Assembly (NCBI GenBank): GCA_977016875.1
Contig: CDRNST010000130.1
Span: 682,001-746,000, forward strand
Direction: 5' to 3'
Origin: Pavona decussata
Lineage: Eukaryota
DNA: 64,000 nucleotides
This document shows, in pieces, positions 25,660 through 27,130 of the stretch. Numbering within the stretch: the stretch's first letter is position 1; every line of letters starts with the position of its first letter. Position numbers and translations under genes: made by a program. Under the pieces are notes generated by a model. The model worked only from the letters and a program-made list of their open reading frames with translations, was not told the DNA's origin and did not search any database.

Positions 25660-25845
25660 GGCTTACACGTAAGCCAGTTATTAATAAGAAAAAAATTCAA
25701 AGGGACTTTTCCTCGGCTTACGTGTGAGCCAGTTTTAATATTTATGAGAGAAAAAAATTCAAAGGGACTTTACCTCGGCTTACGAGTAACCGGTTAGCGA
25801 GAAAAAATGCAAAGGGACTTTACCTCGGCTTACGCGTAAGCCTTA
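25660..25845. promoter_or_regulatory. Array of kB-like GGGACTTT(T/A)CC motifs coupled to GGCTTACGCGTAAGCC-type palindromes
   Basis: Composite units at 25702, 25764 and 25814; a lone palindrome at 25660; further copies at 26361 and 26473. Confidence 0.55.
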
Positions 25846-25864
25846 ATATTTTTAGAGACAGTCC

Positions 25865-26280
25865 CTGAAAATTATTTTCTTTCACATTTGAATTCAACAT
25901 CATCAATCACAATTTTTCCATTTTTCATCGCGTTTGAAATTGCTACAGAGCATAAATTCATTCCATTCATCGCTTCCTTTCTTGTAGCAAATTCGAATCG
26001 CTTAAAAGGGCTTGAGAAAACAAGGCTTTTTCATCTTTTTGTCTTGTTTTGATGGAAGACCAAGTGCTTGTTTCAACTCATTCTTCGTGAGAATAACATT
26101 GTTTTTTATCATTTTCGTTTTTGCCATTTCAACAAGTGAAGAACGAGCAGGTTGCAAAATGATTTCATTGCTTTGTTTGATTAATTCAATGAAATCCCTC
26201 TTTGTCTCTCTTGCAAGAAACAAACCGAAGAGACCTTTTCCTCTCAATTTCAGTTTTAAATCGAGAAAATCGTTTTCCAT
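25865..26280 (-). pseudogene. Small protein with Rho-N/HEH-like repeats and a C-terminal NUMOD1-like HTH; frameshifted
   Basis: LVEMAKTKMIKNNVILTKNELKQALG; after a frameshift near 26010, FEFATRKEAMNGMNLCSVAISNAMKNGK. Confidence 0.45.
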
Positions 26281-26489
26281 TTTTAAATAAATATTTTTAA
26301 AATTTTTTACAAGACACCATTTAAATTTTCACGTGACGGATAATTGTCTTACTTCAAGAAGGGACTTTCCCTTGGCTTACGCGTAATCCGGTTTTTAAAA
26401 CAACGCGTAATTTGGATAAGTCTGATGCTAACAATTATCCAACGCATGAATATTTAAATGGAGTCTAAAACCGGCTTACGCGTAAGTCA

Positions 26490-27130
26490 CTATTTTGCAA
26501 GTTGTTTTTCATCTAAGACAGTTGTGCCCAAAAAAATCGCATTTTCATCACAAATTTCTCGACTGATTTTCATATTAGAACAAAATACTCTTATGGAGTA
26601 CACCACACCACAATAACACAATTTGGGATATTTTGTAAGAAGGTCAAACAAAGATATAAAGAAATTAGCATAACTGCTTGAAAATTGACAAGAGTCTCTT
26701 ATGTGTTTATGCATCACATTATGAAATGCATCCTTCACTCGTTTCAAATGCTCTCCTTGTTTCACCGCAAAGTATAACATCTTCTTTTTATGGCTTGTGA
26801 TGGCTTTAGATAAATCTTTGAGTACTTCAAATATTTCAATCTCATTTCATGGGGTCTTTTCAAGCAAACCATCATATGTCGTGTTAATGGTGACAAATTA
26901 ATTGAAGACTCCAAAAGGCGTCCAAGTTTTTACTTCTTATGAGCTTGAGATCCATCAGTGCTCTCCTTGTTTTGGTGCAATTTTTCAATATCTTTATAGC
27001 ATCTCACCAAGCTAGCCTTAAGTATGGGATACTTCTGACAAAGTGAGTCAAAGGTCACACTACCATCTTTCAACATGGAGTCTGCCATTCTTTCTGGTTT
27101 AAGCACAAATGATTTGTGAATTATTTTCAT
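26490..27130 (-). pseudogene. Polinton-associated helical protein, paralog of 36732-37373
   Basis: LYFAVKQG...YANFFISLFDLLTKYPKL versus LYYSALQG...HVNFLIRFYKLVAKYPRI. Confidence 0.55.

What the first reader, a model, noticed from the sequence alone, without database searches (positions are those of the whole stretch)
25660..26490. Repeated NF-kB-like site plus TTACGCGTAA palindrome: candidate immune-responsive switch of an endogenous virus
Seen: four composite units at fixed spacing, AAGGGACTTT(T/A/C)CCT(C/T)GGCTTACGNGT, at 25702, 25764, 25814 and 26361. The unit at 26361-26370 is exactly GGGACTTTCC, and 25827-25842 is the perfect palindrome GGCTTACGCGTAAGCC. Lone palindromes occur at 25660 and 26473. 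Known: GGGACTTTCC is the canonical kB site used by several animal viruses, cnidarians have NF-kB, and TTAC half-sites are bound by PAR/C-EBP-type bZIPs. Inference: an enhancer coupling virus reactivation to host immune or stress signalling. An origin-like iteron array is the alternative.
Basis: partly seen in the sequence, partly recalled or inferred. Interest (0 to 1): 0.8.

Follow-up and report, generated by a model that had tools for sequence, protein, structure and literature searches.

The report
Palindrome repeats bracketing a small gene
A short stretch of a repeated, virus-like DNA element carries six copies of a 16-base palindrome, four of them joined to a second conserved box, arranged around one small gene that probably encodes a DNA-binding protein. 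This looks like a set of protein docking sites, and the sequence gives no real support for an immune-triggered NF-kB switch.

Summary
Four composite units and two lone palindromes lie at the stated coordinates. The spacing inside the units is fixed, and the motifs occur nowhere else in the 64 kb window.

The NF-kB/bZIP reading is weak:
- Only one of the four units fits the published kB consensus.
- One consensus match in 64 kb is what chance gives.
- The single variable column of the box falls on a consensus-critical C.
- The conserved block runs on past the decamer on both sides.
- The palindrome's TTAC and GTAA halves are two bases further apart than in PAR/C-EBP sites.

The context points elsewhere. 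The repeats bracket one small minus-strand gene (25872-26280, one frameshift here). It belongs to a narrow orphan family of at least 26 relatives. Its confident C-terminal domain resembles, weakly, the DNA-binding module of homing endonucleases.

My best reading (confidence 0.4) is an operator- or enhancer-like array of docking sites for a sequence-specific protein, most likely element-encoded, comparable in layout to baculovirus homologous regions. The rivals are a host NF-kB enhancer, transcript-end hairpins, an inverted-repeat-bounded cassette, and neutral duplication.

The Polinton label is not established: no PolB and no Polinton-type integrase was found. I did not fetch other genomic copies; that step is referred.

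The parts
25221..25672 (+). Apparent plus-strand ORF set ending in the first palindrome. It reads in three overlapping frames (at least two frame changes if it is one gene). Its status as a gene is doubtful.
   Evidence: no Pfam; one relative only, 97% identical
25652..25683 (+). Left arm of the 32-nt inverted repeat; it holds lone palindrome P0 (25660-25675).
   Evidence: (I2)
25700..25730 (+). Composite unit 1: GGGAC-containing box joined to a palindrome.
25762..25792 (+). Composite unit 2; its palindrome is the most degenerate (3 mismatches).
25812..25842 (+). Composite unit 3 with the perfect 16-base palindrome (25827-25842). It lies about 30 nt downstream of the stop of gene A.
25860..25866 (-). 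Inverted copy of the AGGGACT core of the box.
25872..26280 (-). Gene A: a small conserved orphan gene carrying one frameshift in this copy. Intact relatives are 135-137 aa. It is a predicted DNA-binding protein.
26312..26347 (.). Left arm of a 36-nt inverted repeat (83% complementary) with a CACGTG core, lying between unit 4 and the gene A start.
   Evidence: (I1)
26348..26358 (+). Degenerate palindrome remnant directly before unit 4.
   Evidence: read from sequence
26359..26389 (+). Composite unit 4, the only unit matching the published kB consensus (26361-26370). It lies 81-90 nt upstream of the gene A start codon and points away from the gene.
26403..26410 (.). Half palindrome.
26431..26466 (.). 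Right arm of the 36-nt inverted repeat.
26466..26496 (-). Right arm of the 32-nt inverted repeat. It holds palindrome P5 (26473-26488), which is minus-oriented by its flanks and lies directly after the stop of gene B.
   Evidence: (I2, I5)
26490..26914 (-). Gene B: a small orphan gene carrying one frameshift in this copy, with few relatives.

Best explanation
The 845-base stretch 25652-26496 is a compact control module of a repeated, virus-like genomic element. At its centre is a small conserved gene (gene A) that probably encodes a sequence-specific DNA-binding protein with no nuclease part. Two clusters of the same 16-base palindrome lie around it. Four of the palindromes are fused at a fixed distance to a 15-base GGGAC-containing box.

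I read these as docking sites for a sequence-specific protein. The product of gene A is the prime candidate. The sites would act as operator- or enhancer-like elements for gene A and its neighbours, and possibly also as replication or recombination sites. The layout recalls the palindrome-bearing homologous regions of baculoviruses. The three-unit run at 25700-25842 is a recent local duplication of one such unit.

Shown:
- the repeats, their fixed spacing, their clustering and their position relative to the ORFs;
- that gene A belongs to a conserved multi-copy family.

Inferred:
- that gene A binds DNA (weak fold evidence);
- that gene A, or any protein, binds these sites;
- any effect on transcription or replication.
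For: Clustering
- Six palindrome sites are confined to 830 bases, against 0.28 expected.
- The box sits at a fixed distance from the palindrome in four units, with 25 of 31 columns invariant.
- Between unit 4 and units 1 to 3, similarity stops sharply at the left edge of the box. The flank further left is unrelated. This argues for constraint on the unit, or for its copying as a discrete unit.

Arrangement
- A 32-nt inverted repeat brackets the module.
- Unit 4 lies 81-90 nt upstream of the gene A start, followed by an AT-rich stretch.

Gene A
- It has 26 relatives at 50-90% identity, and the intact ones are 135-137 aa.
- 30 representatives turned up in 1.84 billion proteins, down to about 33% identity.
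- Its two neighbours have only 3 and 1 relatives.
- The C-terminal domain is modelled at pLDDT 87-91.
- The best PDB match is the homing endonuclease I-HmuI (probability 0.92, E 0.085).
- In the viral structure library most named hits are HNH or intron-associated homing endonucleases and a NUMOD-motif protein (E 0.006-0.08).

Other
- As single-stranded DNA the array folds far better than shuffles (z -5.9), as palindrome arrays of origins and hrs do.
- The hr layout (repeats of about 64 bp, each with an imperfect palindrome, AT-rich, acting as enhancer and origin, bound by a viral factor) is described in PMC4535591.
Against: - There is no binding, expression or occupancy data.
- No fold hit reaches E 0.001, and no Pfam, PHROG or PDB sequence match exists.
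- Only one copy of the module is in the window, so conservation across copies is untested.
- Units 1 to 3 are recent duplicates and add little independent evidence.
- All non-central substitutions in the palindromes fall in the right half. That is not what a symmetric dimer site predicts.
- hr-like arrays are normally scattered over a viral genome. Here there are two clusters 550 bases apart and none elsewhere in the window.
Confidence: 0.4

Rival explanations
1. Host-responsive enhancer. Host NF-kB binds the GGGAC box and a host bZIP binds the palindrome, so that immune or stress signalling switches on the element.
For: - 26361-26370 matches the published kB consensus and the p65-type optimum.
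- It sits about 80 nt upstream of the gene A start.
- Cnidarian NF-kB proteins bind kB sites with p50-like specificity (PMC5700166).
- kB sites are a loose 9-11 bp class, so the near-matches in units 1 to 3 could still bind.
Against: - Only one of four units matches, and the variable column is consensus position 9.
- Five consensus matches in the window against 3.4 expected.
- Conservation runs on beyond the decamer on both sides.
- The half-site spacing of the palindrome differs by two bases from the NFIL3/PAR/C-EBP site, and that 8-mer is absent from the region.
- Units 1 to 3 lie between converging 3' ends, not at a promoter.
- One database gene model of another copy (P0023) reads through its upstream region. 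It encodes the tripeptide expected from the palindrome core, but residues that cannot be encoded by the 3' half of the decamer. This hint rests on back-translation alone.
- The host was not verified.
- No paper links Polintons to kB sites.
Confidence: 0.1
2. Transcript-end signals. The palindromes form hairpins that mark mRNA 3' ends, as in Mimiviridae, where polyadenylation occurs at hairpin-forming palindromes.
For: - A palindrome lies at or within about 30 nt after the stop of each of the three ORFs, oriented with the gene as judged by a shared A-rich left flank.
- The hairpin rule is described in PMC4402537.
- A32-like and VLTF3-like genes, typical of large DNA viruses, occur elsewhere in the window.
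Against: - The RNA hairpins are short. Five of seven folds are no better than shuffles.
- Six copies show no compensatory change and three unpaired cells.
- No excess of hairpins follows the stops of 17 other ORFs of the virus-like parts.
- In Mimiviridae the hairpins differ from gene to gene, whereas here one sequence recurs.
- Unit 4 is not at a gene end.
- The plus-strand ORF is of doubtful reality.
Confidence: 0.12
3. An inverted-repeat-bounded cassette. The 845-base unit carrying gene A is a discrete insertable or invertible segment, and the palindromes are its end or recombination sites.
For: - A 32-nt inverted repeat (28 matches) bounds the unit exactly.
- Gene A has many more relatives (26) than either neighbour (3 and 1).
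- The C-terminus of one gene B relative departs from the window's shortly before the repeat.
Against: - No target-site duplication is visible at the ends (read).
- Gene A shows no nuclease or transposase signature.
- The neighbours may simply be fast-evolving or spurious ORFs.
- The palindromes also occur inside the unit.
Confidence: 0.13
4. No function. The repeats are leftovers of local duplication and slippage in decaying repeat DNA.
For: - Units 1 to 3 are near-identical tandem copies including their flanks.
- This copy of the element is decaying: gene A and gene B each carry a frameshift.
- Two of the three central variants of the palindrome are of the CpG-transition type.
Against: - Dispersed copies share sharp unit boundaries with unrelated flanks.
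- The copies are placed in an ordered way at ORF boundaries.
- The inverted copies are not explained by slippage.
Confidence: 0.15

Closest known systems
Baculovirus homologous regions (hrs), as described in PMC4535591
   Same: - Runs of three or more repeats of roughly 50-65 bp, each holding a palindrome.
- AT-rich setting in non-coding DNA between genes of a large DNA virus-like element.
- More than one cluster.
- Potential to fold as single-stranded DNA.
   Different: - The palindrome here is 16 bases, against 24-30.
- Only two clusters, 550 bases apart.
- No sequence relation was tested, because fetching an insect virus is barred.
- No IE1-like factor was identified.
- Enhancer or origin activity is unknown.
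kB enhancer elements bound by NF-kB (consensus from PMC4493129; cnidarian NF-kB in PMC5700166)
   Same: One unit (26361-26370) fits the consensus exactly and sits upstream of a gene start. The sites are repeated, as in many viral enhancers.
   Different: - Three of the four units fail at a consensus-critical position.
- There is no enrichment over chance.
- The conserved block is about 31 bases, much longer than a kB site.
PAR bZIP / NFIL3 / C-EBP sites (PMC10941009)
   Same: Palindromic, with TTAC and GTAA half-sites.
   Different: The half-sites are two bases further apart, and the abutting 8-mer is absent from the region.
DNA-binding modules of HNH and GIY-YIG homing endonucleases (I-HmuI, PDB 1u3e), as comparator for gene A
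   Same: The confident C-terminal domain of gene A (strand-strand-helix-helix-strand-strand) gives these proteins as its best fold matches.
   Different: - No nuclease domain, and no conserved His or catalytic motif in the alignment.
- The matches are weak (E above 0.001).
- No sequence-profile hit.
Hairpin-type mRNA 3'-end signals of Mimiviridae (PMC4402537)
   Same: Palindromes directly after stop codons in a gene-dense, AT-rich, virus-like setting.
   Different: One repeated sequence rather than gene-specific hairpins; weak stems; not general in the window.
Iteron arrays at replication origins of plasmids and small DNA viruses (from general knowledge, not tested here)
   Same: Several copies of one short site at semi-regular spacing beside an AT-rich stretch and a small DNA-binding-protein gene.
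   Different: No replication initiator was recognised. Elements that use protein-primed replication need no internal origin, and the replication mode of this element is unknown.

Membership tests
NF-kB (kB) enhancer | Each site matches the published decamer consensus (PMC4493129) | tested here: not met
   Only 1 of 4 units matches; units 1 to 3 fail at position 9.
NF-kB (kB) enhancer | Consensus matches enriched over chance | tested here: not met
   5 in the window against 3.4 expected; 29 of 100 shuffles reach 5.
NF-kB (kB) enhancer | Contact positions kept better than flanks | tested here: not met
   The only variable column of the box is consensus position 9, and the bases outside the decamer are invariant. 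There are only four units, three of them recent duplicates.
NF-kB (kB) enhancer | Occupied by host NF-kB and induced by immune stimuli | not testable with these tools
   No expression or occupancy data are at hand. The microarray tables of PMC5700166 are not held as text.
PAR bZIP / C-EBP site | Abutting TTAC and GTAA half-sites (8-mer) | tested here: not met
   There are two extra central bases in all six copies, and the 8-mer is absent from the region.
Polinton / Maverick | Protein-primed family B DNA polymerase | tested here: not met
   No hit among 48 ORFs scanned (all 23 of at least 150 aa except one antisense to the 918-aa ORF, and most of 80-150 aa). Degraded pieces could have been missed.
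Polinton / Maverick | Retroviral-type integrase belonging to the element | tested here: not met
   The only rve hit lies inside an LTR retroelement, together with gag, zinc knuckle and RT.
Polinton / Maverick | A32-like packaging ATPase | tested here: inconclusive
   Present at 2221-2727 (E 5e-13), but 23 kb away in another partial copy. No link to the fragment holding the finding was shown.
Polinton / Maverick | Terminal inverted repeats bounding the element | tested here: inconclusive
   A 68%-identical inverted pair, 18900-19245 against 56670-57012, sits in a mosaic of partial copies. The element bounds were not resolved.
hr-like palindrome repeat region | Tandem repeats of about 50-70 bp, each with a palindrome, in AT-rich non-coding DNA | tested here: met
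   Start-to-start spacings of 55, 62 and 50, with four palindromes; GC 0.33.
hr-like palindrome repeat region | Several related regions dispersed over the element | tested here: inconclusive
   Two clusters 550 bases apart and none elsewhere in the window. The full element is not in hand.
hr-like palindrome repeat region | Enhancer and origin activity through a virus-encoded binding factor | not testable with these tools
   The only related evidence is a weak fold likeness of gene A to DNA-binding modules.
Hairpin-type transcript ends | Stable hairpin with compensatory changes, general across the element's genes | tested here: not met
   RNA fold z-scores run from -3.5 to +2.0, and five of seven are no better than shuffles. 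There are no compensatory pairs and no excess after other stops.

The most novel reading that the evidence does not exclude
A two-input switch. The exact kB-type site at 26361-26370 makes the promoter of gene A answer to host NF-kB. The gene A protein then binds the palindromes that bracket its own gene. Host immune signalling would thus be relayed through an element-encoded DNA-binding regulator of an endogenous virus-like element.
Probability: 0.08. Interest if true: 0.75.

Novelty: new variant of a known kind. Interest (0 to 1): 0.3.

Why it matters
If the repeats are docking sites for the small protein encoded between them, this would be a self-contained regulator-plus-operator module in a eukaryotic endogenous virus-like element. 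Almost nothing is known about how such elements are controlled. The module would also give an orphan gene family a testable role. The claimed link to host immunity would be more striking, but the sequence does not currently support it.

Tried and rejected
Searches of the region that found nothing
- Rfam and tRNA scans of 24-28 kb.
- Self-comparison of the window: no second copy of 25.0-27.2 kb, so no in-window conservation test was possible.
- Scan for perfect palindromes: none related elsewhere in the window.
- The A-rich left flank of units 1 to 3, tested as a general promoter word: only local clustering.

Gene A
- Pfam, PHROGs and PDB sequence searches gave only noise.
- The first structure model, from a shallow alignment, was unusable (pLDDT 46) and was not searched.

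Structure and boundary tests
- Hairpin rule tested on 19 ORF ends: not general.
- Covariation on the six palindromes: none.
- Search for terminal inverted repeats plus an 8-base target duplication around the 918-aa hAT-like ORF: none.

Literature
- The 10-base palindrome core appears only in cloning primers.
- No paper joins the kB decamer with cnidarians, or Polintons with kB sites.
- The microarray tables of PMC5700166 are not held as text.

Rejected ideas
- A SINE or tRNA-derived origin.
- A subterminal transposase-site array of the neighbouring hAT-like ORF: the units are too long and there are no matching ends.

Full report
**Observation.**

- The GGGACTTT cores start at 25702, 25764, 25814 and 26361.
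- 25827-25842 is a perfect 16-base palindrome.
- Related palindromes lie at 25660, 25715, 25777, 26374 and 26473. That makes six sites against 0.28 expected, and none lies elsewhere in the 64 kb.
- The 14-base box occurs four times exactly, and only here.
- In register, 25 of 31 columns of the four units are invariant, and the box-to-palindrome distance never changes.

Units 1 to 3 are a recent tandem triplication. They share 95% and 85% identity including their flanks, so they count as little more than one instance. The informative comparison is with unit 4, 547 bases away. There the similarity is high inside the unit and stops sharply at its left edge.

- an inverted copy of the box core at 25860-25866;
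- a degenerate palindrome at 26348-26358;
- a half palindrome at 26403-26410;
- a 36-nt inverted repeat around unit 4;
- a 32-nt inverted repeat (25652-25683 against 26466-26496) that brackets everything.

**Context.**

The window is a mosaic. It holds:
- two LTR retroelements (7467-14052 and 48700-55043);
- an intact 918-aa hAT-like ORF (27852-30608);
- several partial, mutually similar copies of a virus-like element, with an A32-like ATPase (2221-2727) and a weak VLTF3-like ORF (55608-56096, with a diverged copy at 35981-36677).

No PolB and no element-type integrase appeared among the 48 ORFs scanned. The Polinton label is therefore unproven. The fragment holding the finding (about 25080-27150) has no DNA relative elsewhere in the window.

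The fragment carries short ORFs with A-rich upstream DNA:
- a doubtful plus-strand ORF set (25221-25672);
- gene A (25872-26280, minus strand, one frameshift);
- gene B (26490-26914, minus strand, one frameshift);
- a 66-aa ORF (26930-27130).

Units 1 to 3 lie between the converging ends of the plus ORF and gene A. Unit 4 lies 81-90 nt upstream of the gene A start and is followed by an AT-rich stretch. A palindrome sits at or just after each of the three stops.

**Gene A.**

The word search gave 26 relatives at 50-90% identity. All come from assemblies with contigs of 0.3-2.8 Mb, and the intact ones are 135-137 aa. The exhaustive search gave 30 representatives, some as low as about 33% identity, and nothing outside the family. 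Gene B has three relatives and the plus ORF one. Gene A is therefore the widespread, conserved part.

Sequence libraries give no name for it. A model from the deeper alignment has a confident C-terminal domain (pLDDT 87-91). Its best PDB match is the homing endonuclease I-HmuI (probability 0.92, E 0.085). In the viral library the named hits are mostly homing endonucleases and one NUMOD-motif protein (E 0.006-0.08). No hit passes 0.001, and the alignment shows no nuclease motif. A DNA-binding role is likely but not shown.

I took the kB consensus from PMC4493129.
- Only 26361-26370 matches it.
- The window has five matches against 3.4 expected.
- The one variable column of the box is consensus position 9, whereas the bases flanking the decamer are invariant.

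The NFIL3/PAR/C-EBP site in PMC10941009 has abutting halves. In all six palindromes here the halves are two bases further apart, and the 8-mer is absent from the region.

One database gene model of another copy reads through its upstream DNA. It encodes what the palindrome core would give, but not what the 3' half of the decamer would give. This is a hint from back-translation only.

Cnidarian NF-kB does bind kB sites (PMC5700166), so binding at unit 4 stays possible. The host itself could not be checked.

**Other readings.**

- *Hairpin-type transcript ends* (PMC4402537). These fit the positions after stops. They do not fit the weak folds, the lack of compensatory change, or the absence of hairpins after other ORFs.
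- *A bounded cassette.* This fits the inverted repeat and the unequal family sizes. It lacks target duplications and any enzyme.
- *Neutral duplication.* This explains units 1 to 3, but not the dispersed and inverted copies with sharp edges.
- *My preferred reading.* The module is an array of protein docking sites around a small regulator gene. Its layout resembles baculovirus hrs (PMC4535591), and the array folds strongly as single-stranded DNA (z -5.9). One point against a symmetric dimer site is that all non-central changes fall in the right half of the palindrome.

The step is referred.
- I fetched no animal or insect virus as a comparator.
- I took no contig to be human.

- None went to a tool, and the patterns come from papers.
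- Searches used degenerate search patterns adapted from the finding.
- Several tool calls, and the printout, used ORF-piece coordinates as references.

Noticed in passing
53041-54059: A 45-base tandem array of 17 or more units inside an LTR retroelement. The element is bounded by 178-base LTRs at 48700-48877 and 54866-55043 (98% identical).
   Followed up: no
7467-14052: A second LTR retroelement with 481-base LTRs (94.6% identical). It has gag, zinc-knuckle, reverse-transcriptase and integrase ORFs on the minus strand, and a 70-base perfect tandem duplication at 11618-11757.
   Followed up: partly
27852-30608: An intact 918-aa ORF with a C17orf113-type zinc finger and DUF4371 (hAT-like). I found no clean terminal inverted repeat or 8-base target duplication.
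   Followed up: partly
15479-15943: A 93-base tandem repeat, four to five units at about 90% identity.
   Followed up: no
5942-6040; 23807-23933; 23599-23752: Long near-perfect hairpin palindromes (arms of 42 and 43 nt at 95-98%, and a weaker one). They are unrelated in sequence to the finding's palindrome. The first sits in a stretch that copy A has and copy B lacks.
   Followed up: no
27197-27240: Two direct copies of a 14-base word with a GAATTC core, upstream of the small minus-strand ORF 26930-27130.
   Followed up: no
1-6400; 18900-20180; 35100-36680; 48268-48552 and 55067-57012: Partial copies of one virus-like family at 68-95% DNA identity, in both orientations. They are interrupted by the retroelements, and the element bounds are unresolved.
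   Followed up: partly
26312-26347 and 26431-26466: A 36-nt inverted repeat (83% complementary) flanking unit 4. Its left arm holds a CACGTG core between unit 4 and the gene A start.
   Followed up: no
proteins P0001-P0057 (relatives of window ORFs): Family sizes differ sharply: gene A has 26 relatives, gene B has 3, and the plus ORF has 1. Near-identical copies of gene B and the plus ORF both report the same longest-contig length (2.2 Mb), which suggests, but does not show, that they share a contig.
   Followed up: partly
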